Below are positions 15,156-38,316 of a stretch of DNA of 64,000 nt, piece by piece. The notes below the pieces were generated by a model that did not search any database, had not been told where the DNA came from, and saw only the letters and a program-made list of their open reading frames with translations. Both the position numbers and the translations under genes were made by a program. The first letter of the stretch is position 1. Every line of letters begins with the position of its first letter. Location of the stretch: NCBI GenBank assembly GCA_035084275.1, contig CM068743.1:37510001-37574000 (forward strand). The letters are read 5' to 3'. The DNA is from Hydrolagus colliei (taxonomy: Eukaryota).

Positions 15156-15369
15156 TAAGCATTGAAGGCCCCAACGTACTGTACCAGCATTGCCACATTT
15201 TAAACTATGATACGACAGCTATAGAGGTTGCTATTTTCTTTCTTCTCAACTAGCAGTAAACTGAAGGCCACAAACAAGCAAAAACATTTTACAATTAACA
15301 GATGTACCTGGGAGAGGGAGAAAACATATAATCTAAAATATGAATCAGTTCAATAAGGTAAAATAAATA

Positions 15370-16925
15370 CCGTAAATCTCTGCGTATAAGGCGCACTCGC
15401 GGATAAGGAGCACACCCCACCTTTGACCACTTTTTGGCGAAAAAAAAGTGTTTTGCTATTTTTGCTATCATTTTCATGTTACTCTTTCTTGTTATTTGGT
15501 GGCCCTGAAAAGGGCCGTTGGTGTGTAAAGCTGTTATGCTAAAAACCCAGGAAATCCTCGTCGTCGGTCGCCTCGTAGAATACTGCGCGAAGTTCCTCGT
15601 CTGAATCTGCATACAGAAGGTCGGCGTCGCTGTTGTCGCTCTGGATGTGCTAGGTGAGTTGTCTTCCATCGTCTTCCATGCCACCCGAGCTGTCGGATAT
15701 ACACACTTCAGGAAACCGCGTCTGATGATCTCTGCTGGCAGCTCATCCCAGACTTTTAGTATCCAAGAGCAGATGGTTGGGAGATCTACCTTCCGCATCC
15801 GTCCCCCAGCCGTGTACGTCTTCTCCCACTGCAACATCCAGTCCGCCCAGCACCTCCGCAGGCCATCCTTGAAGGGCTTGTTCACCGCGACATCAAGAGG
15901 CTGGAGAAGCGATGTAATTCCGCCGGGGATCATCACGAGATTGGTCTTGGATTTCCGCAGGGTCGCCTTTGTGTGGTCCGACTTGTGATAGCGGAAGGAT
16001 TCGAGGATGAGAAGGCTTCTGCGCCTCCTCTTCGCCTCTCCTAGACGCAATGGAGCCAGTCATTGACGAGGTCGTCGTCCATCCAGCCCTTTGGGTGAAC
16101 CCTCACGAAGACGTCGGGCGGGAACCTCTGTTTGGGAAGAGTCTTCCGCTTAAAGATGACGTACGGTGGCAGCTTTTCTCCATCGGCGGTGCAGCCCATC
16201 ATTACTGTGAAGCAGTCCTTCTCGTGACCAGTCGCCGTGATGCTCATGCTCTTTGACCCTTTAGCCGCTATGGTGACGCTCCGGGGGACATCGAAGGTGA
16301 GTGGCGTCTGGTCTGCGAAGCCGATCCTGGTGAGCAGGTAGTCGTACTGGCGGCGCAGCTTGATAACGTACTTCTGGAAGCTGGTCGTCTTTTCCTCCAA
16401 GTCAGCAGGCATGTGCTGGGCGATATGCATACGTCGGCGGATGGATAGCCCGTGCCGAGACATAAAAAGCTAGCCTTGAAATCGACGATTCCCGCCCTGT
16501 CAGCGATGGTCCTGGCTTTGAGTCGAAGCGCTATCGTTGAAATTGCATGTCCCTCAAGCTGTTTCTCATGAACCCAGGCGCTGAACTCCACCTCCAGTTC
16601 AGGCCACTTGGCTGTACCTCTCCGTAGCGCCTTCTTTTGCTTGGGCATCTCCTCCAGAGAAGACTGCATTGAACGCCATTGGCGAACGTTGGATTCAGCG
16701 ATGCCGAATCTCCTGCCAGCCTCCCGGTTCCCAGCCTCTTCAGCATATTTGCAGACGGAGAGCTTGAACAAAGCGGCGAAAGCACGTCGAGACATCTCTC
16801 ATCTGCTACCGGTACTTTGAATTTTCGATGCTCAAAATTTCTTGTATCTGCGTATAGGACACCCCACCACCCTTTGAGAATTTTCGACGTGAAAAAAAGT
16901 GCGCCTTATACACGGAGATTTACGG
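15370..16925 (-). mobile_element. pogo-family (Tc1/mariner superfamily) DNA transposon, near complete, frameshifted POGK-like transposase
   Basis: 28-bp TIRs CCGTAAATCTC(T/C)G(C/T)GTATAAGGCGCACT with 2 mismatches; TA TSD at both ends; ORF pieces resemble Brinker-type DBD, CENP-B HTH and DDE_1 (ADQTP, KLPPYVIFK, GWMD, LQPLDVAVNKPFK). Confidence 0.93.
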
Positions 16926-18554
16926 TACTTCACTTTACAATGGAAAATAGCAATTTTTTAAAAATTCTAGATTTGGATGAAAGGTGACAAAATCATAATG
17001 ATAACTTCTCCTATTCAAGGTATTTGCTTAAAAGTTGCCAGAAACCAAAGCATCGAAACAAAATTTCACCAACGTAGGAATTTTGCCTTGGTTAGTTCCG
17101 GTTATCAGAAACAGATTCTTTTTTCCCCATTTGTATCTTCTCCCATCGAATATCTTTTTTGGGGGGGATAAAACTAGCCTTGTTATATATGATTCATCTT
17201 TCATTCTTTTTTTTCTGTTCTATTACATTTCCAAATTACCCCACCATCTTTAAAAACAAAAATCTGCTGAAAACTCGGCAGTATCACAACATCATTATAA
17301 CAGGTCAATCGGCCCTTATGTCCCGAAAATCTGGAACACTCTCCCTCAATCCCGCCACCTTGCCCCCTATCTCTCCCTTTTCAAGTCCCATCTGAAAACT
17401 TTGTTTTCGACCATGCTTACAACACCCACCCGCCCCCCAGCTCGGAATCAGGCTCTGCCACTATTAAGTGTTCTGAGGTGCTATATCGCCTGACGGGCAC
17501 TATATAAGTGCAAGTTGTTCGAAGCACTCTGAGACTCCTTCCGGCGTGGAGGGCACTATATAAATTGAAGTTGTTGTTGTTGCACTTCACATTTTCTGTT
17601 TCGTCAGGCAACGTAGATTTCAACGAGAAGCCTCGTAATAGTTAAAATGAAATCCTGCTTCCCTACCGCCTAATTCCTTTATACCGAGGTACTACGGAGA
17701 TTTCAATAGCAAGCAAATGATGCTACCACAGTAGTGCTTTGAAAGTCAATGTTTTACAGTGCTGAAACGCAAGGGATAGTTTTCTTCTTTTCAATTTTTT
17801 AAAATTATGATTAACAAACAAAATCCAAACAGGAATGTTGATACATTAAATGGAACAATACACTGAATATTGATTTGGGGGTGAGCATGTCGAACTGAGA
17901 ATTCACTCCCTTATCAGCAGACGGCCATCATAACCTGAGGCTGATTAAGCATAAATTATGGATACTATTCAATATCCCTAAGGAATCATATCACTAACCA
18001 ATCCAAGTCCGGAAGCCATCACCATTTCAAATTTAGATAAAACGTAAATTGACACAATACCATGTACACTTATATATAACGCGTTTCATGTCAGGAAGCA
18101 TCCCATAGAGGCATTTTGAAATACTTACATTAATACTTCCACCAACCAGGGTGATTACCTGGCTTCGGGTTTTGATATTTGAGATGACTGCACTGTACTC
18201 AAGATAATAATAATCCTTACATTTGATATAGCAGAGCTGCCAACATTTTTTAACAAAAAAAGTACTTCTGAAAGCTAAAAACAGTATGTTGTAGTTAAAA
18301 AAATGATTTTTCCCAGAAACTACCACTACTTAACGAAACAATTACAGAGCGAAAAGATCCCAAGTAAAATGGGGCTTCAAAATCCCCTGTGTGGCAAAAA
18401 TTGCATTAAGCGGGAGGCCCATACTGTGTTTCCGTATATGAAAGAAATTGTTCCCAGTAATGCCTTGTGCCTAGCCTAGCGCCCAGCGCTAACATTTACA
18501 GTGTATCAGCAACAGCATAAGGAGGTAGCACTGCTATTGAAGGCAGGGAGAGAG

Positions 18555-18770
18555 TTAAAGAGACTGAGACAGAGAGACTGTGAGTGAGATTGTGACAGCC
18601 AGAGATTCAAACAGAGAGAGAGAGAGAGAGAGAGGGACAGAGAGAGACAGAAAGTGCGCGACCCAGACAGACAGAAAGAGGGAAGAGACACGGAAAGAAA
18701 CACAGAGAGAGAGAGACACACACACAGAGGGAGACTGAGACAGAGAGAAGGAGAGACAGACAGACAGAGC
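18555..18770. repeat. (GA)/(GACA) compound microsatellite
   Basis: Read directly. Confidence 0.9.
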
Positions 18771-20351
18771 ATGGAATTTCCAAAATTCGGATTTTCCAAA
18801 AAACATATTTTAACAAGAAAAATTGTACTGCCGTATTTACTTCAATTTACAGTACTAGATACGGCAAAAACCTACTGGTTGGCAGCTCTGATATAGCTCT
18901 TTTCACGTCTTCTAGACGTATTAAAAGCGCTTCACAGAATATACTGTGAAGTCAATTGACTGTATATCTTAAGATGTTAGTTTAAGTAATGCCACCAACT
19001 TAAAGAAATGCTACAGATTTACCATGAGGTAACGCGGTGTCTGTAGGTGAGATTTAAACCAGTTCAACCAAACTGCCTTTTCATATAAATCTCCACTACA
19101 GCCTAATCGTTGAAGAATATGCCTTAAGCAATACAGTTTTTCATTGAGGATGATTTTGTAGGAAGATGATGTTTAACAAGCTTAACAGGATCAATATGTA
19201 TCCCAGGATGCAATGCTGTTCAAAGCAAGCTTCAAATGAAGCAAAACACAGGGACAAAAACCTGAAGTGTGGAGACCAACACTGAAGAATTAAAGGGATG
19301 ATTGACACAATCGGTCATAATAATCCTTGCATTTGATGTAACGCCTTCTCAAGTCTTCGAGACTGTAAAGTGAATGGATGGTATATTTTTGTGAAATAAA
19401 ATGTTTGCCAGTTGAAGGATTCTGGCTAGAGCTAACAATGATAACGTAATGAAGAAATCAGGATCTGATTAAAATTGAATCCCGAGTAACAACAAATTGC
19501 ATTTACAGAGCTATGTCCCAAGATTCTGGACACTCACTTTTAAAGCCCTCCAGGGTCATGCTCTCTTGTCAACGTCTGCATTCTATGAACATCACAATAA
19601 ACTATCCATTCTGCCTGCTCAGCAGGCACTGGCCAATTTGCACCCAGCAGGAATTTTGTAAATAATGGCCAAATCTGACTAAATACTAAACAGGCTAAAC
19701 ATTTCCAAGGAAAGGTACATGTTACAACTCAGTGCTAATGTGAGAGAAACAGCTTGACGGTCTAATGGGAGAGCAAAGGGATTATTAACCCGAAACAATA
19801 ATATCAAATAGACCCAAATGCCTGTTTGATCCCAAATTTTTTTGTGACTATGAAAATACAATGGTGAATGATGGCTCAATTCACGTTTCTACCAACTGAA
19901 TCAATTGGGGGGGAATGGAGGAGAGGTAAGGAGAAATTAAAGTATAGATTCTACATTCCCAAACAAATGCAGCCATACAGAATAACAGCTGCATTTTTCC
20001 AGAATTAGATTAACTTTGTTGTATATTGTTGTTGCCTTTTGCACACCCTAAGGACCCCAGAACAAGCACATTAATTGTTCTACTTGTTGCTTGGCAAATA
20101 ACAATAATAATCCTTGCATTCAATATAGCGCTTTTCACATCTTCTGTAATTGACTGTATGTGGATGAAACGCTGCAACCATTTGCACACAGCAGTGTCCA
20201 ACAAATAATCATGCATTGACATGATCAATTTATCATTGTTTTTTTTAACGGATTATTATCAGGCGTGTGGAGTAAGGCAATATTATTATTATTATCGTAC
20301 CAATTTCTGGACGCGAATATTCGTGTGTTCAACTCATTGCTCAAATCTTAC

Positions 20352-20455
20352 CTCGATCGGTGTCGATTCCGGTACCTCTCGTAAAATTACGATGCAGCGA
20401 TTCTGATTAGGTCTGACCTTTTCTCCCTTCTCATCCACTTGAACCAAAGGCAATG
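20352..20455 (-). CDS. LARP4B: LARP4B coding exon (S)[34 protein letters not shown] (La motif/RRM junction)
   Basis: ttatag acceptor, GAG|GTAAGA donor, 104 nt, phase 1 to 0. Confidence 0.97.
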
Positions 20456-20552
20456 CTATAAACAATGAGACTTTTGGTAAGCAACATTTTTTAAATTTAT
20501 TAAACAAAACACACAAGAGGAAAACAAGCTTGTCGCATTCGAACACACTTAC

Positions 20553-20689
20553 ATTTCAAAACGTCGACAATCAGGTCCATATCCGTACTCAGTTTCTTCA
20601 CATGGTCGAGGTTTGCTACTGTCAGTATTGGCACATACTGGTCGCTGTCCATTTGGGATACGAGGTACATATCGCTGGCCAGATTTTCT
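20553..20689 (-). CDS. LARP4B: LARP4B coding exon [45 protein letters not shown] (La motif)
   Basis: ttgcag acceptor, T|GTAAGT donor, 137 nt, phase 2 to 1; followed by a 97-nt intron. Confidence 0.97.
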
Positions 20690-21293
20690 CTGCAAAACGC
20701 AAAGTAGATTCATCAATACAACGACAATCATCAACACTGGCTCTCAACTTCATTGCGAGGCTCTGTATTAGTTGAGCATCAGCTCTTTAGGTATGTTCTT
20801 AGTTTGACATCGCTCCACATATTGCCCAATGAGTCGACGACATACCAAGGATTGTTTCCTTCATTAAAACCAAATAAAAAACATGGTGCACAGAGCATCC
20901 CTCCAATCCAAATGAGTGTTTGGCATGTAGGAATGTAACCACTGTTTCTAACAGTTGTGAACACACACAGTATTACCCTTCAATTAAAATTTGAATTGAA
21001 AAGATCATTGTGCCAATCAATAAAATAAATTGCGTCTAATGTCAGATATGGAAATGCAGGCGTATAGGTCATTGAAAGTGGTCTTGCCAGGTGACATGGC
21101 TGTGAATAAGGCAAATAGTATCCATAATAGTTTTATACAGAGGTTAAGAGAACAGAGGGACAGAAATTATGCTATATTAGTGTAAATCATTGGTTAGGCT
21201 GTAACTCGAGTATTCTGCGTCCAGTTCCAAGCACTTGACTTCAGGAAAGATTTTAAGGTCTTTGAGCAGGTGCAGAGGAGGTTCATGCGAATG

Positions 21294-21625
21294 ATAATAA
21301 TAATCCTTGCATTTGATGTAGCGTCTTGTCACGTCGAGACATCTCAAAGCATTTCACAGAATAGGTGAAATGCCGCAGCCAATTACACACAGCAATGTCC
21401 CACAAATAATCGTTGATCGAGTGACCAATTTTTATTTATTTTTTGAGGGGTTTATTACCCCCAGAAAAATGATCTACCTATTAACAACCAGATACCTACT
21501 TATTGCTAGGTAAACAGAAGCGTGTGAAATAAGGAAACTTGTCCAATGTTTCGCCCTGCCGGGAATTGAACCCAGGACCTCTCGCTTGCAAGGTAAATGT
21601 TCTAACCATTGAGCTACAGGAATCC
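21294..21625 (-). mobile_element. tRNA-derived SINE inserted in a decayed CR1 (about 21030-22040)
   Basis: CR1-like sequence (..VQRRFMRM) before the SINE resumes after it (ERLEKLDLYTLEQRRLMGDLIEV). Confidence 0.8.
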
Positions 21626-22395
21626 AGGGATGCTAAAAAATTAAGTGCTACAGTAATGATCGAGAGGTTAGAGAAGCTGGACCTGTACACATTGGAGCAG
21701 AGAAGGTTGATGGGAGACTTGATTGAGGTACACAAAATAATGAGGGCTTTTATCTGGATAAATAGAAGTTATCTTGTTGAATAGATAGAATATCTCGTTG
21801 AATCGATAAATAGAAGTTATCTCGGAGTCAATAACTTGGGACTATAGTTACAGGATAGATGCACAGTCACAAAAAGATCAAAAAGGAGAATTTAGGAGGA
21901 TTTGTTTTTCAACCATATGGTAGCAATGTAGAACGTCCTGTCCTGGAGGGTGGTGGAGGCAGAATCCATTGTAACTTTAAACGGGAAGTAGTATAGGCAT
22001 GTGAAAAACGTGGCTTGAAGAGTGAAGGGGATGTGCATGTTTTGGTATTGAAGTGATCTTAATAATAATCTGTCCAAAAAAAAACACAATAATAAAAATT
22101 GATCCATTTTCAATCCACGACTGTTTGTGGGGACACTGCTGTGTGCAATTGGCTGCCGGGTGTCGCCCACAAATATACAGTCAATTCACTTTACAGTATA
22201 ATACATGAAGCGCTTTGAGACATCAATAAGATGTGAAAAGTGCCAGATCAATTGCAAGGATTATTATTATTATTATTATCTTCCTGTGAAACCAATTAGC
22301 CTCCATTATGCACTGTGCTAAGTTTGTAACCCAATGTGGAAATAAGTTACCAAAAAATGTGTCACAGCATTCAGAAAACTATCATTATGATTTAC

Positions 22396-22489
22396 CGAGA
22401 CAAACAGAATTCCAATGTCTTTTTCAGCAATTCTCGAAGATCTTCATGGCCAACAGTCTGCTGTTCCAAAGAAGTCTGATCACCTCCTC
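22396..22489 (-). CDS. LARP4B: LARP4B coding exon GGDQTSLEQQTVGHEDLRELLKKTLEFCLS (start of La motif)
   Basis: tgttag acceptor, CG|GTAAAT donor, 94 nt, phase 1 to 2. Confidence 0.95.
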
Positions 22490-23428
22490 CTAACAGATAC
22501 AAAAGAAAAACAAATCATTTAGGCAGGAAAAACAGACAGCCAGTTTTCATATATCAACGCAATGCAACACATTATCCCCTTTCAAGTACATAAACAATAA
22601 TTATTATTATTCCAGTGTTGATTTTAAATCCATGACTTTGAATAAAGATGTAATTCCCCGTTCTAAATTTTATATTGCTTACGATAGACAAACTGGACAA
22701 AAAATAGGCCAGGTGCTGGCAATTAAAATTGTTTTAAGAGATTATTTTTTGGATTTGTATCTGAAAGCCAAACGGACCTTTAAGAATTTTAAACGGTCAA
22801 TATTGATTGCCACAGTAATTCTCCCAGCTCATTATCCTGAAGGCTGACAGGCCAATGTACTCAGATGAAATGCCAGCAACATGGCTAAGTAATTGAGTTG
22901 GTTAGAGCAAATGTGAACCGTAAAGGTATAACATTGGAATGGTGTGAAAACTGAGTACACATCCAAGATAATGTCTTAAGTTATCTTCTGTGCCAAATAA
23001 AGTGATATCCTATGGCAGGGAGGTGGTGGAGGGGAGGGTATAGAGAAATGAGGTGAGAGGGTAACAGATGTGCTTGGCAATGGGACTGTCAGAATCAAGA
23101 CCACCCAGTCTGGCTTATCAGTGAGACTTGGACTCAATACACACACTCTTCCCACTCAACTCCAATTTGCCTTTCAAGCGAAACCCTGCACAGATGGAAT
23201 GGTTCCAGTTAAGGACATCTAATGGGAATCCTGCCAGACAGTGCTCTCAATGGCAAACTATGCAGTTTTAGTTGGTGGAACCTGAGCAAATCTCTCAACA
23301 CTTTATGACTCTCACCAACCTGAACCTAATGCTCGCCGGAATGAAGCAAACAGGGAACATGTGTGCTTTCCACTCCAGAGAGTGAAAATTTCACACGTAG
23401 GTGGCATACACCTACATATGGAATCATG

Positions 23429-23715
23429 GGAGTCCTGTGGCTCTGCAGTTAGAGCACTCGCCTTGCAAGCGAGAGAACTGGGTTCGATTCAGGGCAGGGC
23501 GAAACCGTGAGCAAGTTTCCTTACTCCACATGCCTGATAATAATCCCTTGAAAAAGAACAATAAATTGGCCATTTCAACCCACGACTGCACAATTGGCTG
23601 CTGCGTTTCGCCCATAAATGGTCAATTTACTTTACAGTTTATTCTGTGAAATGCTGTGAGACGTCTAGAAGACGTGAAAAGCACTACAGTATATCAAATG
23701 CAAGGATTATTATTA
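23429..23715 (+). mobile_element. tRNA-derived SINE
   Basis: Head GGAGTCCTGTGGCTC..GGTTCGATTC; family tail. Confidence 0.86.
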
Positions 23716-23890
23716 TACATATGTGGGACTCAGGTTGGATTGGATACCCTTAAGCAGGGTGATTATTTCCACTGGTATACACGGTTGGCCACAAAATGTC
23801 AAAGGTACAACAACCCATAAAATAACAATTAGATTTACTTGTATCAACAACCAACAAGAAAAGCCTAGTTATATTGGATGGTGGATTTAA

Positions 23891-24175
23891 GGTGGCAAGT
23901 GGGGTAAAACATTGTTTTCATGTCAAAGTGTATTTTGAACTATATACTTTCAGAAATAAAACTTATTTTCAAACAAATATAGGGAATGTGACATATCAAA
24001 TAAGCACTTCCGGCTTATTTTATTGTTGAATTCTTATTCTTTACCCTATATTTCTTTGGAAATAAGTTTATTTCACCAATCAAAACAGTTTATTTCTGAA
24101 AGTATATAGTTCAAAGTACACTTTGACATGCAAAAAATATTTTTATTTTTTTTATTTTTTACCCCACTTGCCACC
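23891..24175. mobile_element. Palindromic MITE with TTAA flanks (Kolobok-like termini)
   Basis: TTAA-GGTGGCAAGTGGGGTAAAA...TTTTACCCCACTTGCCACC-TTAA; internal arms (CATGTCAAAGTGTA..GAACTATATACTTTCAGAAATAAA) are also inverted. Confidence 0.8.
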
Positions 24176-25529
24176 TTAAAACGATACTCAAAATAAGTCT
24201 GCTTCCTTATTTAATCAGATTTCACTTTTTTGGCAATTTTTTGGAAAAAGTTTGCCTGACATACAAATAGAGGAACAAAGCAAACAAAAAGCACCAAACC
24301 CACAAATTTTCTAAAAACGCTAAGTTAGTGATTCATTCTGGAATGACTAACCGCAAAGCCTTATTTTTCCAATTAATGTGTACACTTCAAAATACTTCAC
24401 AAAACATGTAACTGACATCAAATTTCAGTTAATTGCACAACTGAAAATTGTGAATATTTTGAGAAAGACCGCAACTATTGTTTTCAGATTGTCTCTCTCT
24501 CTCCCTCCGCAAAATATCTCTGAAGACTGCACAAAGCAACAATGGTGTACTTTAATGGTGACATTTTGTTTGTTAATTGTAACCACAATACCATGGACAT
24601 AATGCTAGTCTTGCGTTCTAATTGATATCAAAAGGACGTTCCCATTGAAATTTAGGATACAGCTAGATTAACAGTATTACTCTCATTCATGCCAGGATCG
24701 ACTATGCTAATCTCCTGCTTGTTGGCTTTCCCAACTCCTCCCTCTATGGACTACAGATCATCCAGAACACTGCAGCCCGTGAACTCTCCCACGCCAAGCT
24801 CCATGCGCTCCAAGATGCCACCTGCCGTGGAAGGCACTATATAAATGCAAGTTGTTGTTGTCGTTGAACCTATCCACTCCACTTTCCCGACTCCACTGGC
24901 TTCCCATCATTCAGAAGTTTCAATTCAGGATCATGGTCCTCACCTTTAAAGCGCTTAATGGCGATGCCCAGCCCTACCTATGCGACCTCCTAACCCCTTA
25001 CCAATTCATTGTTTTGTAGATTCAGAACATTCACAACTCATTCATAATGAATATGTTTTCCAGTATTTGGGTTTAAATCTACTTTACTCTAAATTCTCTC
25101 CAGATGCTCAATCCTATTTTCTTATTTTACTTTCAAGCTTTCATTGTTTGGGATTGATTTTGTGGATCATTCAGCAGAAACTGCCTATATTTAAATGTCA
25201 CATGAGGAGAGAATGAGGCTCTGCCGTGATCTTTTTTCCACAGCTAAAACTGTCTCATCAATACCACTGTCCACACTCACACGTAGCACATCCATTTGAG
25301 TGAGGCAGGAACCAATTTCAATATTCTATATATTTCAATTATACGTCCTCCCCTCCTAACCTTCCCAGGGAGCAAATCTCACGTTTCTTCAATGTTACCT
25401 CATTCTCTGAACATATGGATGGCATGCATCAGACTTCTATTACTGCTTTGCGCAATTTTTTGTGAAGCATTTGTAGCTTGATGACTAAATTGTATTTGGT
25501 GAAATCTAGGCGACAGGGTCAAGATCTAC

Positions 25530-25694
25530 CTGTCTGCTTGGTTCCATGCATCGTCTCGTATTCTGAAAAATTAGAGTCAGGACATTGGAGTGTCACAACA
25601 TTCGGGTCTGGAGGCTCAGTGGGAGAAACTATCAAGTGGGGCTCCTGTGACGGTCTCTGGAAGGACTTGACAGCATCACCAATGGCCTCAAATC
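25530..25694 (-). CDS. LARP4B: LARP4B coding exon FEAIGDAVKSFQRPSQEPHLIVSPTEPPDPNVVTLQCPDSNFSEYETMHGTKQT
   Basis: tttcag acceptor, G|GTAGAT donor, 165 nt, phase 1-1 bridging the neighbouring exons; weak similarity (SEY) to the LARP4B N-terminal region. Confidence 0.8.
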
Positions 25695-25879
25695 CTGAAA
25701 TCACGTTGAAGTGCATTACAATTATAAAACTATATATTAATTATCTACTCATTATGCTACATTACTCCACAGATAACCCCAAAACAGTTCACAAACCAAG
25801 AAGTACGTACTTTGGCTCACTAAATGGGCAACTTCAGCCACCCCCCCACCCCTCCCCTATTCAAAAAATTGTGCCCTGT

Positions 25880-26202
25880 AACGTATTCATTAGTGCACTC
25901 GCTTGGAAGTGAGAGGATCTGGTTTCAATTCCCGGTCAGGGCAAAACATAGGGCAAGTTTCCTTACTTCACGCGCCTCTGTTTACTAACAGTAAGTAGGA
26001 ACCCAGTTATTAGACAATAGGTGGATCTCTTCTCTGGGGGTGATAATCCCTTAAAACAATACACACACCCACACACACATTTGGTCACTCTCACAAAATA
26101 TACAGTCAAAATACATTTTATAGAATATTTTATGAAGTGCTTTGAGACGTCTCAAAGACGTGATGAGGCGCTATTTCAAATGCAAGGATTATTATTGTTA
26201 TT
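25880..26202 (+). mobile_element. tRNA-derived SINE (older variant)
   Basis: GGGCAAGTTTCCTTACT body; family tail. Confidence 0.8.
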
Positions 26203-27465
26203 AAGAACGCTCAAATATACTGCACCGTGGAGTGAGGAGACCCTGTCTGTACCTAATCCTGCCTACAGCTAAACTACATTGTGTTGTTGCCGATTAAGTT
26301 ATAGCCTCAGAATCTATTACAGCAGAAGAACCTAGTGTATTCAGTGAAAAATCCACAAAACCAAATCTTTTCTAGGATTTTTGAGTAAGAGTTTTGGCAT
26401 CCTCTCAAGAACAACTCGGTTCGATTCCTGAGTGGGGTGAAACCTTAGATAAATTTCCTTACTCCACATTTCACCTGCGATGACTCCCTGCTTAAGCATT
26501 ACCAAGAACAGCTCGTGTTCTCAATTTCCAAAAGGCTCCAGAGTAATAAATTCCTGACAATATCTCCAGCTTCAATTGTGCAAGAGATTTAGGGCACTGT
26601 AGCTAACAGAACTGTTGTTATATAGGACAAACCATTATTTTTATAATCCATTAATCCCCAATACCCATCCATTCATATGGATCTCTACATTTATGGTAAA
26701 AATAGCTGGGTAACATTGTAGTCAGACAGTTGAATATGGGATGTTACATTGATCACACAAGGATGGACTGGCCACATTTTGAATTAGAATATTACAGTGC
26801 AAAGGTACACAAAACACACGATAGGCCATATCTTTCATGTGTAATCTACAGTCGCACAGTGATATTGATTTCAATTGATGTTGCTTCTAGAATCAATACT
26901 CAATGCCAGAAATGGCAGATAGCCTTGGAAAAGGTTGGTTCAAAATAGTACAATGAACCACTAATCAGATAACAGACTAAAGTATGTACTTTATAATATA
27001 TTGACCTATTACATCTAATAATAAATTTGATGTATGATAAATTATAATCACACATTGCATCCAAAATAGTTTATCACACTTCACAGTATCCTTGTGGCTC
27101 TTTTTTGAGGCATCCTCCCATTGCTAAAGGTGTAATATCCAATTCAAGGATTATTGTTTACGCAATAACTCATTTTTCAGTTAGAAGTAACTAATTACCA
27201 CTCCAAATCACTCTAATAATAAAGGGAAGGACAAAGTAAAATAATTCTTTGTAAAAACACGACAATAAATTGGTCACTCAGTCCACGACTGTTTGTGGGA
27301 TATTGCTGTGTGCAGCTGTCTGCCGCGTTCTGCCCACAAGAAAATATATAGTCAATTCACTTTGCAGTATATTCTATGAAGGACTTTGAGATATCTCAAA
27401 GGTGTGATATCAAATGCAAGGATATTATTATTATTTTTATTAATATATTCACAAGAAAAACATAC

Positions 27466-27601
27466 CCTCTGAGCAGGTATCGGGATTTGGCAACGGTTCT
27501 TCCCATGTCTCACAGGCATTGCTAGCAGCAGCATCAAGATTTAGCATGTGATTTGCCCATACTTTGGCGTTAGGATTCAAATCAGAAACCTTGGCCGAGT
27601 C
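27466..27601 (-). CDS. LARP4B: LARP4B coding exon DSAKVSDLNPNAKVWANH...CSE (PAM2w motif)
   Basis: ttgcag acceptor (phase 0), G|GTATGT donor; LNPNAKVW is the PAM2w motif of the LARP4 family. Confidence 0.95.
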
Positions 27602-29080: not shown

Positions 29081-29397
29081 AATTATAATAACAATCTTGG
29101 CATTTGATATAGCGCTTTTCACATCTTATCAACGTCTCAGAGCGCTTCAAAGAATATACTGTAAAGTGAATTGACTGCATATTTGTGGGTGAAACGCAGC
29201 AGCCAATTGCACACAACAGTGTCCCACAAGCAGTTGTGGATTGAAATGACCATATTATTGCGGGTTTTTTGGACCGATTATTTTCAGTGTATGGAGTAAG
29301 GAAACTTGCCCAAGGTTTCGCCCTGATCTGCCTGGATTCGAACACAGGTCTCACGCTTCTAAGGCAAGTATTCTAACCACTGAGCCTCAGGAGCTCC
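29081..29397 (-). mobile_element. tRNA-derived SINE starting about 25 nt into the intron after the giant exon
   Basis: Head GGAGCTCCTGAGGCTCAGTGGTTAGAAT; full body and tail. Confidence 0.9.
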
Positions 29398-29423
29398 ACC
29401 AGAGTTAAGAGATAGATACTCAC

Positions 29424-32400
29424 AGTCTGGTCATATTCATTAATCCATCCCCACACATCACTAGTTTCAGAGAGGGAAAGCGGGTAGGGATATATTCCCA
29501 TAAGAGCTACTGAAATGTCAACATTCTTTGATACTGGTTCTTGGGTTACATCCATTTGTTGTAGGTTGACCTCTTTCATAATTTCAGAAAAGCAGGTATT
29601 CCACAAACAGCTCGGCTGGTTGACCGAATTGGGCTTCAGCTGTTCAGAAAATGTATGCACAGATCTATCTTTGGCCACGGTATCAAAAGCTTGATTGACC
29701 TCCCACAACGGGGCTATTTCGCTTTGAAAACCATGTCCATCTATTTTAGGTTGGTCCCCAGACTCCCCTAGAATAACTTTCATCATCCCCATGACACATC
29801 TCTCACTATTTGCAGACGTTTCAGACAAACATCTCCCCTTTTCATCACAATCTGTGAAGTTCGAAACTTGGGGTATTTCATATGAAGGAGTTGACGCATA
29901 TCGGTCGATCTGACTTTCATCTGTAGAAAGTTCCGTGGATGCATAGAATTCAGTAGAGTCATATACATCTTTTGGAATGCTAGAAAAAGGAAAGGCCTCA
30001 CTATCTTCCATTGCTACTGCTGTTTTTAAACACTCAGCACCCTTTTGTGAATCAGTTTCAAAGCTGCACAGACTTCTACACTTGACTGAGTCCTCTGCGG
30101 TTCCATCACTCGTGTCATATGGGACTTGTGGATCTTCATTTTGTTTTCTGCATAGAGCTGGGTACTGTATCAACTCGGTGCTAAATATCCGGTTCAAGTC
30201 TTCACTTGTCCCTTCATCGCAGTATTTTGACAGATTCGCATTTACGTTGCCATCAATTCTGCTCCTCAATTGTGTATTTTCCACTGTTTCAGGACCTCTA
30301 AGCATCACTTTTTCTTCCCAAGCAGCTGCATTCAGCCAGGATACACATTCACTGCTCCGAAGATTCTGCTCAGTTATTTCATTCAAGACTATTTCTTTCT
30401 CAAGGTCTTTGAAGCTGTCTAAATCTCCACCTGAATTCGAGCACACATCCAGGTAGTTTTCCAGTACACCAGTAATTACAGAACAATTCTGAATGGCAAA
30501 ATCCCCTTCGCTGTCTACTTCTGAAGTAGAACCATTAGCTAAAGCCAATGTATCTTGGTGATCCAGCTTTACCTTATTGATGTCTGTGGCACTGTAATCA
30601 AACTCATCTTTCCGCTGCTGATTAGTTGCGTTCGTGGCCAACCTTTCAGAGTTCCACAAATTATTCAATTCATAATGATTATCAGCCACCTGCTCAGGAA
30701 CATCAGATTGTAAGGATGTCAGGCTGGCATGGCAGTCACTGTCAGGTATGTCGAACATAACACCAGTTTGCAAAACATTCTCTATGCAAATAGCGTCAAG
30801 ATTTTCCTCATCTTGACAACTGGCGTTTTGATTCTGCAGCTGCTCAACAATGATAGAATCACTGTCCTCATCAGAAGCCAGCACCCTGTCGTTAGCATGT
30901 GGATCAAGTTTCAAAACCTTCCCTTTGGCTGCTACTTGCTCAGGCTGTTGTCGAGCGGTAGATGTGGGTATCGATTCCAAATAGTCATCCAATTGGTTGC
31001 TTGGCTGCATGAAATACAGACATTCACCTTCTGGAGGTTCAGAGTACAAACCGTTTATACTTTCATCAAACTCGGTATTTTGTCCCACTTTTTGGAACGC
31101 ATCCGTATCACTCTGACGATTGGCAAACTCACCTTCATCACCACAGTCTTTCTGCAAAGTAGTTGGCGTACAAATTAAGTGGTTACGAATGTGCTCATCA
31201 CAAAGGGATTGACTGAAGTAATGGCTTGAAATTCCCGTAAAGCATGAATTAGGCATTCTTTCGGCCACAGAATTACAATGCAATGTTTGGTTCAACTTTG
31301 ATGACTCTTCCAGTCTCATTTCAGGCAAACCATCGGACAGATTTTGGTCATTTGCATGACTGCATGGGGCTGTCCCTTCATCCTCAAGCAGTTGGACAGT
31401 TGAGATTAGATCCAGCAGAATTTTAGATTCAGATTTTTTCTCATCAAGTGTCCATGTACAAGCCTCTTTGAAAACTGAATCAGAGGTTTCCAAATCAGCA
31501 AACTTTAGCGATGGTTCGAAAACATTCTCTGCAACTCCAATTACAAATTTTGAAGCAGGATCTGTTGTAGGCCTTGGAGGAGGATCAGAAAATTGCAAGC
31601 ACGTTCCATTGATAGCATCTGTTCCATATATGTGACAATCTCCTTCGCAAAGTTTCACAACTTGTTTACTTTCTGTTGATAAATACGCAGTCACAACTGT
31701 ACCTTTAATCGGGTTATTTTGCATGGGAGAACCCATCGCTATCTGCTTTCCATCACAACCAGAGTATTCTAACAACTTGCTAACGCTGGAGTACTTTGAA
31801 GCATTGTTGCCTGAACTAAGACAGTTGTTCCACTCGGACAAGCAAGGTTTCTCAACAACTGAAGGCTGCACAAAGCTGCCTTTCATTCCATATTTAGGTT
31901 GGCCATTGCGAGTATCTGCATCACATTCAGTTGTTTCTGCAAGCAGCCGGACAACACTCAATCTGTGGTTTGATAATATAGAAGCCTGCGCGTCAGTGTA
32001 TATTTCTGTAGAAACATTGTGTGGCATCATAAAGCCTGACTCTACTTGTTCCATTACTTCAGGCTCAACTGCCTCTCCTAGCTCAGCTGCAGCTGCCGTG
32101 CTTCCCAGCAGTGTTGAAAAGTCCTGGACAGACCATGTTAGGTTGTGCTTTCTCTCCACTCTAACAGCTGAACAATGCATCTCTGGAACAATGTTACAAG
32201 TAAAAGCAGGTGCCGCCTCATCTAGTTCATCATCTTCCACATCTATTGCACAGATACTGTAGAATTCATTTGGTCTGGGTTTTATATTTATTTCAGAGGC
32301 TACATGATTGGTATCCAGGATGTTCTCTTGTATGTTTTGCCTCCACGTTTTAATGCCTTCAACTTCCTCGGGCGTTTTATTTTCACCGAAATGTAACTCA

Positions 32401-33056
32401 GTCACTAAACGACATGAAATATTTTGGAAAATCTCACCGCTGGTTTGACAACTCTCCATATATTCTCCACTTGGAGGTTTTTCAGGGGTTGGAAGCAGTT
32501 TCTCATTCTCGGGGGAATCACTCTCAACGGTCGAATCAGGCATTCCTTCAGTTACATTCTCGGCACATTCGCCCTTTCCAGAATTTCCCTTCAAAGAATT
32601 AGCGAAACTCCACAACTTTCGGGATTCACTCTTCGAGTCCTCGTTCTCTGTTTTAACAGAGCACTGTCTCTTTGGCAAACCAAAGATATCCCACAGTGTC
32701 CTCCGCAAATTCGACCGGGAAGAATCTTTGGTGAGGAAATAATCAGTGACCTCCGCAAGATTCTCAGGGTGCTGAAAATGATTTGCATTCTGGTAAGAGC
32801 ATTCGTCATTTAACCAAGGCCAGAATCTCCTCCGGTTAGACTTGAACCCTCCTTGCCCCTGGTTGAGAGCACATGGAGTTTCCATCTTACCGTACTCTTC
32901 AGCTTGCACATCTAATTCATTATTTTCAGTGACATTGGCGCGACAACTTTGAATGCTTTCAAGGGTCTCTCTTCTTGTCTTCTGTAACAAGCTTGTTTTT
33001 TCACTGACCTGTTCAGGCACCACAGGGCCCCTCTCTTTACTGAAGCAGCAGCCCAT
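29424..33056 (-). CDS. LARP4B: Putative alternative giant first coding exon of LARP4B: 1211-aa acidic Ser/Glu/Cys-rich extension starting MGCCFSK
   Basis: 3633 nt without a stop codon or repeat insertion; strong start context CAGCATGG with an in-frame TGA just upstream; ends ACT|GTGAGT in phase 0, matching the phase-0 acceptor at 27601. Confidence 0.8.
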
Positions 33057-35109
33057 GCTGAGTCACGACAATGCTACTACACACTGAAGCTCAGAGCCCA
33101 TGAAATGAACTAACTGCTAACGCAGACGAGCCAACACCCGAGTACCAAAAATAGTGCGGATAAAAAAAACTGTGCTGATGTTCAATGTGCTCCTGTCAAT
33201 CAAAGCCTTGGTTCAGGGTTCGGCAGGGGGCAAGATTTAAGGCTGAAGGATTGTGGAGGGGCTGGGATCACTTGGCTCCACCCCCCTGTCTGCTGTCAAC
33301 ATGGCTAAATTGCCAGTCAGTCAATGGATCGGCAGCTGGCAATGTCCAGCCGTCAGTCAGGGGATGGGATGAGGGGGTCACGATGATCTAACGAAGGGGG
33401 TTAGCCAGTGGACTGAGTAGTCAGTCAGCTGGCTGAATAAGTTTAAACAGCTGTGCCATCGTGAAAAAGTGCAAATAAATGAGTCAGATTCAGCCAACTT
33501 TTTCCTGAATTTTGCAAACCTCAAAGTGATTGGGGGAGGGAAGGGGATTTTAAGCCTTGCTGACCTTCCACCCCACCCACCCCCTTCTAGCACTAAATTA
33601 ACTTTATATTATGAAAGTTTGGCCCCTAGGTATTTCCCAATTGTATACTATTGGGCTGGACCATTTTTGCGATGGGGGGTGGAAGAATTTCTAGAGTCCA
33701 AGTTAGTGCTACAATAGAACTAGATCAATTTATTTCACTCTTATTTTTATTTCTGGTATTAGGCAAATTCCACTCCATCTCTGATAGTTCCATGCGTAGC
33801 TGGGATGCATGGAATTCTTAGTTTGGTTTGGATAATCTGAAGCATAATGATGGATTATGACACTCTCTTTCAAATTACAGTTTTCTGTTTTTATTTCCTA
33901 AAGATGGTGTCCAGAAAACCTCTGCATGTCAAGTCGTAAGAAAGGCACAGCATAAAAGGAATGCATTGCAATATTAATGGTGTTCTTTGCCAGCCACACA
34001 GCTAAGGTTAATAGTCGTCATCCTTGCATTTGGTTTGGTGCCCTATTCATGTCAGGATGATGTCCCAGAGCTTGTCATAGAAGCTACCTTGAAGTGGAGT
34101 GATTTGTGGGCGAAGGTGCCAGCTAATTTATGCACAGCAATATTCCACAAACAGCCACTGAATTACCAATTTATTTTGAGGGACTGCTGGCCAGGATAAC
34201 AGAAGAAACTCCCTTCTCTATTCAAATAATGCCATGTGATCTTAAACATCCACCTGAATAGGCAGACAGGACTTCGGTTTGACATCTCATCCAAAGGAAT
34301 GCAATGCAATGCAACACGTCCTCAGGGCTGTATCGGAGTGTCAATTTAAGACTACGAGTCCATGAGTCTTGATTTCACAGCTTTCTGACTTGATCCACAA
34401 GACTGCTTCCACTGAGCCAGGTTAACATGTGGGATCCTTCATCCCACTTCCCAATCTGTGAACTTGTGTGTATGATGGGTTTACCTCAGATGCTGAAGTA
34501 GAGCATAGTTATAACACTATTTGTGGGCAGAAAAATCCTAGCCAGCAGTATAATCGGACATGACTGCCAGTCAGCTCTTCTGCATTCACTACAAGAGTCA
34601 GAAAGCTGACCGGTAACCAGCTCAAAAAACTAGCAGACTTCGGAACCATCGGGTTGTGACAGTCAACGCTTCCTACACATTGCATCAGGCAGCAACCTGA
34701 AGACTGGAAACTAGCCCTTTATTTAAAACAAAATACACACAAGAAAACAGCCAGCATTTTGAAACAAGACAACATGATTTGAAGTGTGCCAGCTACCTAG
34801 GTGCATTCTGAATGTTTCCATTCCAATTACACTATAATCAAACACATACTGTATTGTAATGCAACCCATTATAACAGGTTCTACTATATTCACCAATATA
34901 TTCGCCTATAATTTTAAATAGAAAGCTGAAGCTGTGTCATCATATGACATCTGTTCAAAAAACTCATGGGACAAGGATTAAGGCACAGAGTGGCTGAAGT
35001 AGAGGGGATGATGGAAGATATAAAAGGGGTGGGAGGGAACTGGGGCATGTTGAGATTCATGTTTCTCCTTTGTCTTCCTTGTCCTGCCTCCCCCTCTCTG
35101 TTAATCCTC

Positions 35110-38133: not shown

Positions 38134-38214
38134 CAGAGGAGAACTGTCTACAACTTCTTGCACTTGCTGCACCTGCGGTTCAGCCACAACTTTAGTGTCC
38201 TGGTCAGAAGTCAT
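38134..38214 (-). CDS. LARP4B: LARP4B canonical first coding exon MTSDQDTKVVAEPQVQQVQEVVDSSPL (exon 38134-38265 including 51 nt of 5'UTR)
   Basis: ATG at 38214, CTG|GTAAGA donor, ccccacag acceptor at 38266; matches the MTSDQDAKVVAEPQ N-terminus of LARP4B. Confidence 0.95.
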
Positions 38215-38316
38215 GAGCCGTCTGCTTTCTGGCTCTGCAGAGAGAATTTTTCTGCGCAGCAAGATCTGTGGGGCAAAATACAAAGTGTTACATTTCAGAA
38301 CTACAGTACTAGTAAA

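What the first reader, a model, noticed from the sequence alone, without database searches (positions are those of the whole stretch)
29424..33056. Hidden 3.6-kb coding exon in LARP4B intron 2 predicts a giant lipid-anchored LARP4B isoform
Seen: a same-strand 1211-codon ORF with no stop codon and no SINE/LINE insertion, in introns where repeats occur every 1-3 kb. It has its own ATG in strong context (CAGCATGG) with an in-frame stop just upstream, and it ends at ACT|GTGAGT in phase 0. The next LARP4B exon (27601, DSAKVSDLNPNAKVW) also begins in phase 0. Inference: splicing replaces the 27-aa MTSDQD start with a 1211-aa acidic, Ser/Glu/Cys-rich, probably disordered arm and keeps PAM2w (PABP binding), the La motif, the RRM and the C-terminus, giving a protein of about 1,900 aa. 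Established: LARP4B is described as a soluble cytoplasmic mRNA/PABP/RACK1-binding protein. I know of no characterised membrane-anchored form, though automated annotations may list this as an isoform or uncharacterised locus.
Basis: partly seen in the sequence, partly recalled or inferred. Interest (0 to 1): 0.93.

Follow-up and report, generated by a model that had tools for sequence, protein, structure and literature searches.

The report
Giant lipid-anchored LARP4B isoform exon
A 3.6-kb exon inside the LARP4B gene of a chimaera-like fish encodes a long, floppy, fat-anchored arm that replaces the protein's normal short start; public gene predictions for many vertebrates already list it, but it appears unstudied.

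Summary
There is a 1211-codon open frame on the minus strand (29424-33056). It has a strong-context ATG, an in-frame stop three codons upstream and a phase-0 GTGAGT donor. The next LARP4B exon (PAM2w, from 27601) also starts in phase 0.

RefSeq already models this join in the elephant shark (LARP4B X1, 1933 aa, arm 76% identical to the window's) and in the coelacanth. A length-filtered search found 296 LARP4B proteins of at least 1063 aa. Of the 118 new ones listed, 96 begin MGCC. They span birds, turtles, monotremes, marsupials, placentals, amphibians, sturgeon and teleosts.

Conservation lies in short islands: MGCCFSKE, an acidic dileucine (EKTxLL), FYSIC, YA(S/T)TPSYEI, LWN and YPY..VWGW. 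AlphaFold2 predicts the rest to be disordered (mean pLDDT 35).

The first seven residues match the engineered MGCCFSKT membrane tag of mT/mG mice. The anchor layout matches LAMTOR1's lysosomal signal.

No RNA data could be had for this species, so the splice itself is inferred from orthologous models. I found no paper describing the isoform. Verdict: real, ancient, already annotated, functionally uncharacterised.

The parts
29424..33056 (-). Alternative first coding exon of LARP4B ('arm' exon): 1211 codons, ATG to phase-0 donor
   Evidence: It is 76% identical (914 of 1202 aligned residues) to the arm of Callorhinchus LARP4B X1. In a simulation of unconstrained substitution to the same amino-acid divergence, 0 of 300 runs stayed stop-free.
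32985..33056 (-). Residues 1-24: MGCCFSKE (Gly2 myristoylation site, Cys3/Cys4 palmitoylation sites) plus acidic dileucine E19-K-T-S-L23-L24
   Evidence: M1 G2 C3 C4 K7 E19 L23 are invariant in 48 sequences. 98 of 104 proteins begin MGCCFSKE, and 100 of 104 carry [DE]xxxL[LI] within the first 32 aa. Tag and LAMTOR1 papers.
33063..33065 (-). In-frame TGA three codons upstream of the arm ATG. It also ends a 12-codon in-frame uORF that starts at 33101.
   Evidence: read directly from the sequence
33193..33202 (-). Single Pbx:Prep 'DECA' decamer TGATTGACAG, 137-146 nt upstream of the arm ATG; a candidate internal-promoter element
   Evidence: 7 copies in the window against 0.42 expected; the other 6 lie in the main promoter; motif identity. 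Whether it functions is inferred, not shown.
32241..32264 (-). Conserved island FYSICAID (arm residues 265-272)
   Evidence: F265 Y266 S267 I268 C269 D272 are each present in at least 90% of 48 sequences; alignment shown
32163..32171 (-). Conserved island SAV (arm residues 296-298)
29871..29906 (-). Conserved island DRYASTPSYEIP (arm residues 1051-1062)
   Evidence: D1051 and P1057 are nearly invariant. The TPSYEI core is kept from chimaera to monotremes and eroded in placentals.
29586..29606 (-). Conserved island LWNTCFS (arm residues 1151-1157)
   Evidence: W1152 is nearly invariant
29442..29492 (-). Conserved C-terminal island YPYPLSLSETSDVWGW (arm residues 1189-1205), just before the splice donor
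   Evidence: P1190, W1202 and W1204 are conserved in at least 21 of 23 species; alignment
29418..29423 (-). Splice donor GTGAGT
29373..29423 (-). Intron read-through tail (16 codons plus TAG stop) that runs into a tRNA-derived SINE
   Evidence: Read depth is 3-4 million at 29001-29400.
27466..27601 (-). Next LARP4B exon (PAM2w: DSAKVSDLNPNAKVW...). The acceptor AG is at 27603-27602. The 3' end is set by a GT and by homology.
   Evidence: 91% identical to Callorhinchus
38134..38265 (-). Canonical coding exon 2 (MTSDQDTKVVAEPQVQQVQEVVDSSPL, 27 aa), which the arm exon replaces
   Evidence: It is identical to the first 27 residues of the Callorhinchus short isoform P0003.
1796..25695 (-). Remaining LARP4B core exons present in the window (about 25528-25695, 22395-22490, 20554-20703, 20352-20471, 14403-14516, 12124-12189, 11781-12041, 7840-7962, 6621-6872, 4275-4460, 1796-1945). 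The gene continues beyond the window.
   Evidence: tblastn of P0001, 82-98% identity per exon
58490..59160 (-). Main LARP4B promoter region with six DECA decamers

Best explanation
The stretch is an ancient alternative first coding exon of LARP4B. It is orthologous to the exon that public gene models in elephant shark, coelacanth and many other jawed vertebrates already join to the PAM2w exon.

Transcripts that carry it must bypass the MTSDQD exon. They would either start at an internal, non-CpG-island promoter just upstream of 33056, or splice from the non-coding first exon. They would translate from the ATG at 33056 and splice from 29424 to 27601 in phase 0.

The product would be a LARP4B of about 1,930 aa. 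The normal 27-residue start is replaced by a 1211-residue, acidic, intrinsically disordered arm. The PABP-binding PAM2w, the La motif, the RRM and the C-terminal regions are unchanged.

The arm begins with a myristoylation and dual-palmitoylation signal (MGCCFSKE), followed by an acidic dileucine (EKTSLL). The isoform is therefore most likely held on the cytosolic face of membranes, either the plasma membrane or, as with LAMTOR1, late endosomes and lysosomes. There it would keep poly(A)-binding protein and bound mRNAs at that surface. The few conserved short motifs in the arm probably recruit further partners.

Shown here: the open frame, the splice-site geometry, orthology to annotated giant isoforms, motif conservation and predicted disorder. 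Inferred: that the splice and the start site are used in this species, lipidation, location and function.
For: Anatomy.

Orthologous models: Callorhinchus X1-X5 and Latimeria X1-X3 all begin MGCCFSKE and pass from the arm straight into the PAM2w exon. The long and short Callorhinchus isoforms converge at DSAKV, the first codon after the window's acceptor.

Breadth: 296 LARP4B proteins of at least 1063 aa were found at E<=1e-5. Of the 118 new ones among the 120 listed, 96 begin MGCC. By their source names they come from NCBI's automated pipeline (XP_/isoform X), from UniProt-only entries (e.g. A0A669NXU2) and from submitters' own annotation ('hypothetical protein' with locus tags).

Constraint: the arm is 76% identical to Callorhinchus, with 8 gap events. 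Unconstrained simulation to the same divergence gave a mean of 16.5 stops and 0 of 300 stop-free runs.

Motifs: M1 G2 C3 C4 K7 E19 L23 are invariant in 48 sequences. 100 of 104 proteins carry an acidic dileucine.

Disorder: AlphaFold2 with a 48-row alignment gave mean pLDDT 35.4, 0 of 1200 residues at 70 or above, and no secondary structure. The arm matches no Pfam, NCBIfam or PDB entry.

Anchor: MGCCFSKT alone targets tdTomato to membranes (passages). The first 39 aa of LAMTOR1 (myristoylation site, two palmitoylation sites, acidic dileucine) target fusions to lysosomes (passages).

A nested gene ending in the intron is unlikely. The read-through tail is 16 codons and ends inside a SINE.
Against: There is no RNA evidence for this species.

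All long isoforms seen are automated predictions. The cDNA-derived Callorhinchus entries (V9KGS4, V9KZ13, V9KWY3) and the curated Xenopus NP_001123740.1 are short forms. Prediction pipelines can pass a model from species to species by homology.

dN/dS could not be computed. All 5 differences between run X1 and the window inside the exon are nonsynonymous. The arm is less conserved than the core: 76% against about 92% by my arithmetic. Most of the arm is therefore only weakly constrained.

The engineered tag goes to the plasma membrane and LAMTOR1's signal to lysosomes, so the compartment is open. Anurans have LF in place of the dileucine. Several islands are eroded in placental mammals.

The internal promoter rests on one decamer, noticed after the fact, and there is no CpG island.
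Confidence: 0.8

Rival explanations
1. The arm is an independent nested gene. The exon is transcribed from its own promoter and the transcript ends in the intron before 27601. The product is a free-standing, lipid-anchored, disordered protein of about 1227 aa that never carries the LARP4B RNA-binding module. On this view the database joins to LARP4B are prediction artefacts.
For: The ORF has its own ATG and a stop 16 codons past the donor. Four polyadenylation-like hexamers lie in the intron at 29083, 28138, 27956 and 27946. No cDNA-derived entry carries the arm. No RNA data could be obtained.
Against: The read-through tail and its stop lie in a lineage-specific SINE, so they cannot be the ancestral C-terminus. 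The arm's last conserved island abuts a consensus GTGAGT donor in phase 0, which matches the next exon. In 22 of 22 other species examined, the arm is modelled as running straight into the PAM2w sequence. Bird models include several distinct arm-to-core splice forms, which is hard to explain without transcript support. Only 2 of the long models carry names other than LARP4B or 'hypothetical protein' ('uncharacterized protein LOC...' in Pelodiscus and Acipenser), and both still contain the La module.
Confidence: 0.08
2. The isoform is the same, but there is no internal promoter. The arm exon is an internal exon reached from the main promoter by splicing the non-coding exon 1 to an acceptor upstream of 33056 and skipping exon 2. 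Expression would then follow the housekeeping LARP4B promoter and be set by splicing choice.
For: A T-rich tract followed by AG lies about 60 nt upstream of the ATG (...tttttttatccgcactatttttggtactcgggtgttggctcgtctgcgttag). There is no CpG island upstream of the arm (CpG o/e 0.35 at 33000-33499 against 0.71 at 58000-58499). A Coturnix model joins the MTSDQD exon to an internal part of the arm, so arm sequence can be reached from the main promoter in birds.
Against: A DECA decamer of the kind repeated six times in the main promoter sits 137-146 nt upstream of the ATG. The in-frame TGA and a uORF lie between the candidate acceptor and the ATG. No transcript data exist either way.
Confidence: 0.3
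3. The frame is a decaying or non-functional relic in this lineage. It would be open by inheritance but no longer expressed as protein.
For: 5 of 5 within-species differences are nonsynonymous. The arm evolves faster than the core.
Against: 1211 codons stay open with a mean of 16.5 stops expected under no constraint, and 0 of 300 simulated runs were stop-free. The start, donor and motif islands are all intact and identical or nearly identical to Callorhinchus. The five variant codons lie outside the conserved islands.
Confidence: 0.03

Closest known systems
Predicted LARP4B isoform X1 of Callorhinchus milii (XP_007899383.2, 1933 aa) and its counterparts in other vertebrates (e.g. Latimeria XP_064410713.1, 1914 aa)
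   Same: It has the same gene position and the same N-terminus (MGCCFSKERGPVVP.QV.EKTSLLQKT). The arm is about 1,200 aa and 76% identical, and it joins DSAKVSDLNPNAKVW in the same way.
   Different: The window comes from a different, related species. The arm is 7 residues shorter, with 8 gap events. These database entries are automated predictions without published characterisation.
Canonical LARP4B (742 aa in Callorhinchus, P0003; described as soluble and binding PABP and RACK1)
   Same: Everything from the PAM2w exon onward is shared: PAM2w, the La motif (PF05383) and the RRM.
   Different: The canonical form starts with the 27-aa MTSDQD exon and has no lipidation signal. The LARP family review that I read in passages describes only residues 1-71 as the conserved N-terminal region and does not mention an arm.
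LAMTOR1 (p18) N-terminal lysosomal targeting signal
   Same: It combines Gly2 myristoylation, Cys3/Cys4 palmitoylation and an acidic dileucine within the first 39 residues. That segment is sufficient to place fusions on lysosomes (passages). The arm has all three elements within 24 residues.
   Different: There is no detectable sequence homology (phmmer of the first 40 aa against PDB sequences found nothing at E<=10). LAMTOR1 is a small folded Ragulator scaffold, whereas the arm is 1,200 disordered residues. Localisation of the arm is untested.
Engineered membrane tag MGCCFSKT (MARCKS residues 1-8 with Cys at positions 3 and 4) used in mT/mG reporter mice
   Same: 7 of 8 residues are identical to the arm's natural start, MGCCFSKE. 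The tag is described as myristoylated on Gly and palmitoylated on the two Cys, and as sufficient for membrane targeting (passages).
   Different: The tag is artificial, lacks the dileucine, and is reported at the plasma membrane.

Membership tests
LARP4B (La-related protein 4B) giant isoform | The exon lies inside the LARP4B gene, on the same strand, between the MTSDQD exon and the PAM2w exon | tested here: met
   tblastn maps the LARP4B core exons to 27601..1796 on the minus strand at 82-98% identity. The MTSDQD exon is at 38134-38265.
LARP4B (La-related protein 4B) giant isoform | The arm is orthologous to the N-terminal arm of annotated long LARP4B isoforms | tested here: met
   E=0, 75-76% identity to Callorhinchus. 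The N- and C-terminal blocks match Latimeria at E=6e-19 and 2e-15. The islands are conserved in 23 and in 48 sequences.
LARP4B (La-related protein 4B) giant isoform | Splice-compatible junction with the PAM2w exon (donor, acceptor, matching phase) | tested here: met
   ACT|GTGAGT in phase 0; cag|GAC in phase 0
LARP4B (La-related protein 4B) giant isoform | Transcripts of this species actually carry the arm-to-PAM2w junction | not testable with these tools
N-myristoylated, dually palmitoylated membrane anchors (MGCC-type) | Met-Gly start, small or uncharged residues at 3-5, Ser/Thr at position 6, Cys next to Gly2 | tested here: met
   MGCCFSK. M1 G2 C3 C4 are invariant, and F5 and S6 are present in at least 90% of 48 sequences. 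The consensus rules themselves are recalled, not taken from a call.
N-myristoylated, dually palmitoylated membrane anchors (MGCC-type) | Demonstrated lipid attachment and membrane association | not testable with these tools
   Evidence is by analogy only: the 8-residue tag MGCCFSKT targets reporters to membranes.
LAMTOR1-type lysosomal targeting signal | An acidic dileucine [DE]xxxL[LI] close behind the acylation sites | tested here: met
   E19-K-T-S-L23-L24 in the window. 100 of 104 MGCC-start proteins have it within 32 aa. The 4 misses are 3 anurans with LF and 1 pigeon model with a different second exon.
LAMTOR1-type lysosomal targeting signal | Sequence homology to LAMTOR1 | tested here: inconclusive
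   phmmer of residues 1-40 against PDB sequences found no match at E<=10. However, 40 residues is a weak query, and solved constructs may lack the N-terminus.
LAMTOR1-type lysosomal targeting signal | Late endosome or lysosome localisation | not testable with these tools
   Needs imaging of a tagged arm N-terminus.
Any known folded protein domain family (Pfam, NCBIfam, PDB) | A significant profile or sequence match within the arm | tested here: not met
   The window arm matches 0 families. Six orthologous long isoforms show only La (PF05383) and, in 3 of the 6, a sub-threshold RRM_fung match (E 0.06-0.1), all within the core. PDB gave 0 matches at E<=1. The ESM Atlas gave no usable hit. AlphaFold2 gave mean pLDDT 35.4.

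The most novel reading that the evidence does not exclude
All jawed vertebrates may keep a second, so far unstudied form of LARP4B. It would be a protein of about 200 kDa, pinned by myristate and two palmitates, and steered by an acidic dileucine, to the cytosolic face of endolysosomal or plasma membranes. There it would hold PABP-bound mRNAs through the unchanged PAM2w/La/RRM module. Its 1,100-1,200-residue disordered arm would present a handful of 450-million-year-old short motifs (FYSIC, YATTPSYEI, LWN, YPY..WGW) to unknown partners. This would be a built-in membrane tether for poly(A) mRNPs, distinct from the adaptor-based tethers known so far.
Probability: 0.35. Interest if true: 0.7.

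Novelty: already known. Interest (0 to 1): 0.45.

Why it matters
LARP4B is treated in the papers I could search as a soluble factor of about 740 aa that binds PABP, RACK1 and mRNA. The sequence data here show something more. Its gene carries an alternative first coding exon that has stayed open since before chimaeras and bony vertebrates split. It bears an invariant acylation signal and a near-invariant sorting motif.

If the protein is made, it would place an mRNA-stabilising, PABP-binding module on membranes. That bears on local translation and on mRNA transport on organelles. The test is simple in species where models exist (chicken, Xenopus, Mus species). For this scan the lesson is more modest.

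Tried and rejected
RNA evidence. The look-up of sequencing runs (kind rna) returned one run, X1. Read laying showed it is genomic, with contigs at about 50x across both exon and intron. No junction, start or expression information could be had.

The other locus collections hold viruses, metagenomes and prokaryotes, so I did not try them. dN/dS was not computed. I substituted a stop-codon simulation.

Direct searches with the arm were insensitive. The search for homologous proteins on the whole arm gave 2 hits of 7266 candidates. Residues 1-280 gave 1 hit of 1190 candidates, at E=0.035. The search of protein representatives gave 1 hit in 1.84 billion representatives, probably because long isoforms cluster under LARP4B representatives. 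The breadth appeared only when I searched the conserved La module of the public Callorhinchus protein, with the length filter excluding short isoforms. Only 120 of its 296 hits were listed, so the taxonomic picture is partial.

Fold and family searches on the arm gave nothing: Pfam, NCBIfam, PDB sequences and the ESM Atlas. I did not run fold search, because a model with mean pLDDT 35 gives meaningless matches.

Motif readings I considered and did not adopt, all from recalled consensus patterns. WGWI as an LC3-interacting motif: not kept, because Latimeria has WSWH. YEIP as an SH2 pYxxP site: untestable here. A hidden transmembrane segment: rejected, maximum Kyte-Doolittle score 0.96.

Literature. 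I found no paper describing a long or lipid-anchored LARP4B, using these searches:
- LARP4B, isoform, myristoylation
- LARP4B with palmitoylation, lysosome, N-terminal extension, long isoform, alternative promoter. None of the 20 listed papers held LARP4B, so this search was weak.
- LARP4B + isoforms + N-terminal. 40 papers matched and 20 were listed; none dealt with this by title or abstract.
- LARP4B, PAM2w, vertebrates, evolution
- MGCCFSK. 9 papers matched. By title they are reporter, imaging or tool papers. I read passages in 2, and both concern the engineered MARCKS-derived tag.

I read only passages of PMC10963253 and PMC7928011. Supplements were not opened. Figure S3 and Supplemental Table 1 of PMC7928011 may bear on LARP4B N-terminal regions. 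The library lacks most subscription journals. I deliberately did not look for or examine any human sequence. Whether the arm is intact in humans is left open.

The window's own spliced model (arm exon joined to downstream exons) was never assembled, typed or searched. Exons were handled separately, and the only joined sequences used were public database proteins as returned by the tools.


Full report
WHAT IS THERE

On the minus strand, the ORF listing gives one ORF, 29373..33056, of 1227 aa. Its ATG at 33056 sits in cagcATGg, and an in-frame TGA lies three codons upstream. After 1211 codons the sequence reads CAG ACT|GTGAGT. This is a consensus donor in phase 0, with the last exon base at 29424.

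The frame runs on for only 16 codons past the donor. It stops inside a tRNA-derived SINE, whose read depth in a genomic run is 3-4 million against about 50 for the exon.

The next exon follows tttttgcag at 27601 and reads DSAKVSDLNPNAKVW, the PAM2w region of LARP4B, in phase 0. The canonical start exon lies upstream at 38134-38265. It encodes MTSDQDTKVVAEPQVQQVQEVVDSSPL (27 aa) and ends in phase 0. The LARP4B core exons follow downstream, from 25695 to 1796.

The frame is the longest stop-free stretch of 6228 in the window: 1229 codons, against 432 for the next longest and a median of 12. The other long ORFs are a reverse-transcriptase relic, a DDE transposase relic and frames across a G-rich repeat. 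Depth in the genomic run is flat across 29401-33400. The neighbouring intron holds high-copy repeats. This supports 'no SINE/LINE inside the exon'.

WHAT IT IS

A search of 5.8 billion proteins with the arm returned two hits. One was Callorhinchus milii 'la-related protein 4B isoform X1'. The other was Latimeria chalumnae 'la-related protein 4B isoform X2', which begins MGCCFSKE.

Their clusters hold the current RefSeq models. Callorhinchus has X1 at 1933 aa, X2 at 1929, X3-X5 at 1554-1568, and the short X6/X7 at 742/738. Latimeria has X1 at 1914, X2 at 1880, X3 at 1648, and short forms at 761/727.

Callorhinchus X1 starts MGCCFSKERGPVVPDQVDEKTSLLQKT, carries a 1218-residue arm, and passes ...VWGWINEYDQT into DSAKVSDLNPNAKVW. 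The short X6 passes ...VVDSSPL into the same DSAKV. The two isoforms thus diverge at the codon that follows the acceptor in the window. That is independent support for the splice geometry read from the window.

The window's arm is 914 of 1202 aligned residues (76%) identical to the Callorhinchus arm, with 8 gap events. The core exons are 82-98% identical, about 92% overall by my arithmetic. The 27-aa start exon is identical. The window therefore comes from a relative of the elephant shark, most likely another holocephalan. That is an inference, because the organism is coded.

HOW WIDESPREAD

Searches with the arm itself were insensitive. I therefore searched the La-module region of the public Callorhinchus X1 protein. 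The tool's length filter (at least 0.55 times 1933 aa) excludes normal LARP4B of about 740 aa.

The search found 296 proteins at E<=1e-5 among 1894 candidates, and 120 were listed. Of the 118 that were new, 96 begin MGCC. The other 22 start elsewhere. Some appear N-terminally truncated, and two carry the MTSDQD start.

The MGCC models come from:
- birds (dozens)
- turtles (Malaclemys, Pelodiscus)
- monotremes (platypus, echidna)
- marsupials (Macrotis, Sarcophilus)
- placentals (Equus, Mus pahari, Mus caroli, Peromyscus, Cavia, Vulpes, Lontra, Artibeus, Oryx, Echinops, Tamandua, Cebus)
- amphibians (Xenopus, Ambystoma, Lissotriton, Ascaphus, Eleutherodactylus)
- a sturgeon
- elopomorph teleosts (Megalops, Synaphobranchus)

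By their source names they come from NCBI's automated pipeline (XP_ accessions, 'isoform X'), from UniProt-only entries and from submitters' own annotation ('hypothetical protein' with locus tags). All are predictions. The curated or cDNA-derived entries I saw are short forms: Xenopus NP_001123740.1 and the Callorhinchus V9K* entries.

Bird models also show several distinct arm-to-core splice forms. One has the first half of the arm joined straight to the PAM2w exon. Another has the MTSDQD exon joined to the second half of the arm. This suggests transcript support and a modular arm.

WHAT IS CONSERVED

In a 23-species alignment of arms, 26 columns are identical in at least 21 species. In a 48-sequence alignment M1, G2, C3, C4, K7, E19 and L23 are invariant. 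F5, S6, E8, K20, L24, F265-C269, D272, S296-V298, D1051, P1057, W1152, P1190 and the two Trp of VWGW are each present in at least 90%.

The islands, viewed, are:
- MGCCFSKE
- EK(T)xLL
- (E)FYSICxxD.ED
- SAV
- VD(K/R)YA(A/S)TPSYEI
- (L)W(N/T)
- YPYxL...E....WGW, ending a few residues before the splice site

Between the islands, identity to Latimeria is near background (25% overall). Some islands are lost or eroded in placentals: FWPW and TPSYEI.

AlphaFold2 with the 48-row alignment gives mean pLDDT 35.4, no residue at 70 or above, and no helix or strand. The arm matches nothing in Pfam, NCBIfam, PDB sequences or the ESM Atlas. It is acidic (pI 4.43, 204 D+E against 98 K+R) and has no transmembrane-like segment. 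The picture is a long disordered linker carrying a few short linear motifs.

IS IT UNDER SELECTION?

I could not obtain a second nucleotide sequence, so dN/dS is not available. As a substitute I mutated the exon at random until it reached the observed amino-acid divergence. That introduced a mean of 16.5 stop codons, a minimum of 7, and 0 of 300 runs stayed open. Both lineages, however, keep about 1,200 open codons.

Against strong constraint, all 5 differences between the genomic run and the window inside the exon change the amino acid (codons 471, 769, 780, 1019 and 1082). All five lie in spacer regions. The sample is small, but it fits the view that only the frame and the islands are constrained.

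HOW IT PROBABLY WORKS

An MG start with Ser at position 6 is a typical N-myristoyltransferase substrate, and Cys3/Cys4 are typical palmitoylation sites. These rules are recalled, not taken from a call.

Direct support comes from the literature. [quoted passage not shown] It is described as myristoylated and palmitoylated and as directing tdTomato to the cell membrane (passages of 10.1101/2020.09.18.303743 and PMC9183799). Seven of those eight residues are the natural start of this arm.

The next conserved element, E19-K-T-S-L23-L24, fits the acidic dileucine pattern. Several of these are isoforms of one species, so they are not independent.

[quoted passage not shown] The sites are G2, C3 and C4 (passage of PMC6454084). 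I confirm the motif and its conservation, but the location is untested.

My reading is a membrane-anchored LARP4B that keeps PAM2w, the La motif and the RRM. It would therefore hold PABP and mRNA at a membrane surface. Lipid anchoring I rate as likely, at about 0.65. Lysosomal as opposed to plasma-membrane residence I rate at about 0.3.

WHERE TRANSCRIPTION STARTS

Because of the in-frame TGA, arm-coding transcripts cannot be read through from the MTSDQD ATG in the arm's frame. They must start downstream of exon 2 or skip it.

One copy of the Pbx:Prep 'DECA' decamer TGATTGACAG lies 137-146 nt upstream of the ATG. The window holds 7 copies against 0.42 expected, and the other six lie in the main promoter at 58620-59152. 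The motif's identity comes from a passage of PMC6023610. The lead came from note s1-902148. This hints at an internal promoter served by the same factors.

The hint is weak. It is a single site noticed after the fact, and there is no CpG island. A T-rich tract with an AG about 60 nt upstream of the ATG could instead be an acceptor. I leave the two options at roughly 0.5 against 0.3.

RIVALS

An independent nested gene (0.08) is disfavoured. The SINE-derived tail, the phase-matched consensus donor directly after a conserved island, and the uniform join in other species all argue against it. A dead relic (0.03) is excluded for practical purposes by the open frame.

COMPARISON AND NOVELTY

The feature is the orthologue of an exon already in public annotation for many species.

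What seems to be missing is any study of it. Searches for LARP4B with isoform, myristoylation, palmitoylation, lysosome, N-terminal extension, long isoform, alternative promoter, PAM2w and evolution turned up nothing on a long form. A search for the start motif also found nothing relevant. A family-wide evolutionary review describes only residues 1-71 as the conserved LARP4B N-terminal region (passages of PMC7928011). A 2024 LARP4A/4B paper has no occurrence of 'isoform'.

These searches cover open-access papers and bioRxiv only. I read passages, not whole papers, and supplements were closed.

LIMITS

- There is no RNA evidence for this species.
- Only 120 of the 296 long models were seen.
- No human sequence was sought or examined.
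- The window's own spliced model was not assembled or searched as a joined sequence. The exons were treated apart, and joined sequences were used only as public database proteins.

Noticed in passing
window 33193-33202 (-) and 58620-59152 (-): The Pbx:Prep DECA decamer TGATTGACAG occurs 7 times (0.42 expected). Six copies are in the main LARP4B promoter and one is 137-146 nt upstream of the arm ATG. This may mark an internal promoter that uses the same factors.
   Followed up: partly
window 33063-33101 (-): A 12-codon upstream ORF, in frame with the arm ATG, ends in the TGA 6 nt before it. If the 5' UTR includes it, it could damp translation of the giant isoform.
   Followed up: no
window about 29250-29400 (-): A tRNA-derived SINE starts a few bases after the splice donor. 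Read depth there is 3-4 million against about 50 in the exon. The stop of the read-through frame (29373-29375) lies inside it.
   Followed up: partly
window 29813, 30002, 30719, 30751, 31646: The contig of genomic run X1 differs from the window at five places inside the exon, and all five change the amino acid (A>T, S>R, T>A, D>G, E>K). All lie outside the conserved islands.
   Followed up: yes
proteins P0025, P0070, P0076 (birds): Bird gene models split the arm. One form joins arm residues 1-633 straight to the PAM2w exon. A Coturnix form joins the MTSDQD exon to the second half of the arm. A Gallus form skips about 190 residues. The arm appears modular and alternatively spliced in birds.
   Followed up: partly
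window 57500-57969: A G-rich 24-nt tandem array of 19.7 copies (94% matches) lies just downstream of the putative first exon and promoter. It creates spurious long ORFs on the plus strand.
   Followed up: no
window 52375-53646 (-) and 15295-16050 (-): Transposon relics lie in LARP4B introns: a reverse-transcriptase ORF (RVT_1, E=1e-16) and a DDE_1 transposase ORF (E=1e-15).
   Followed up: yes
arm residues 74-92 and 1051-1062 in the 23-species alignment: The FWPW island is present in chimaera, coelacanth and partly in sturgeon and sauropsids, but is deleted in placentals. The TPSYEI island is intact from chimaera to monotremes and eroded in placentals. This suggests relaxed constraint on the arm in placental mammals.
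   Followed up: partly
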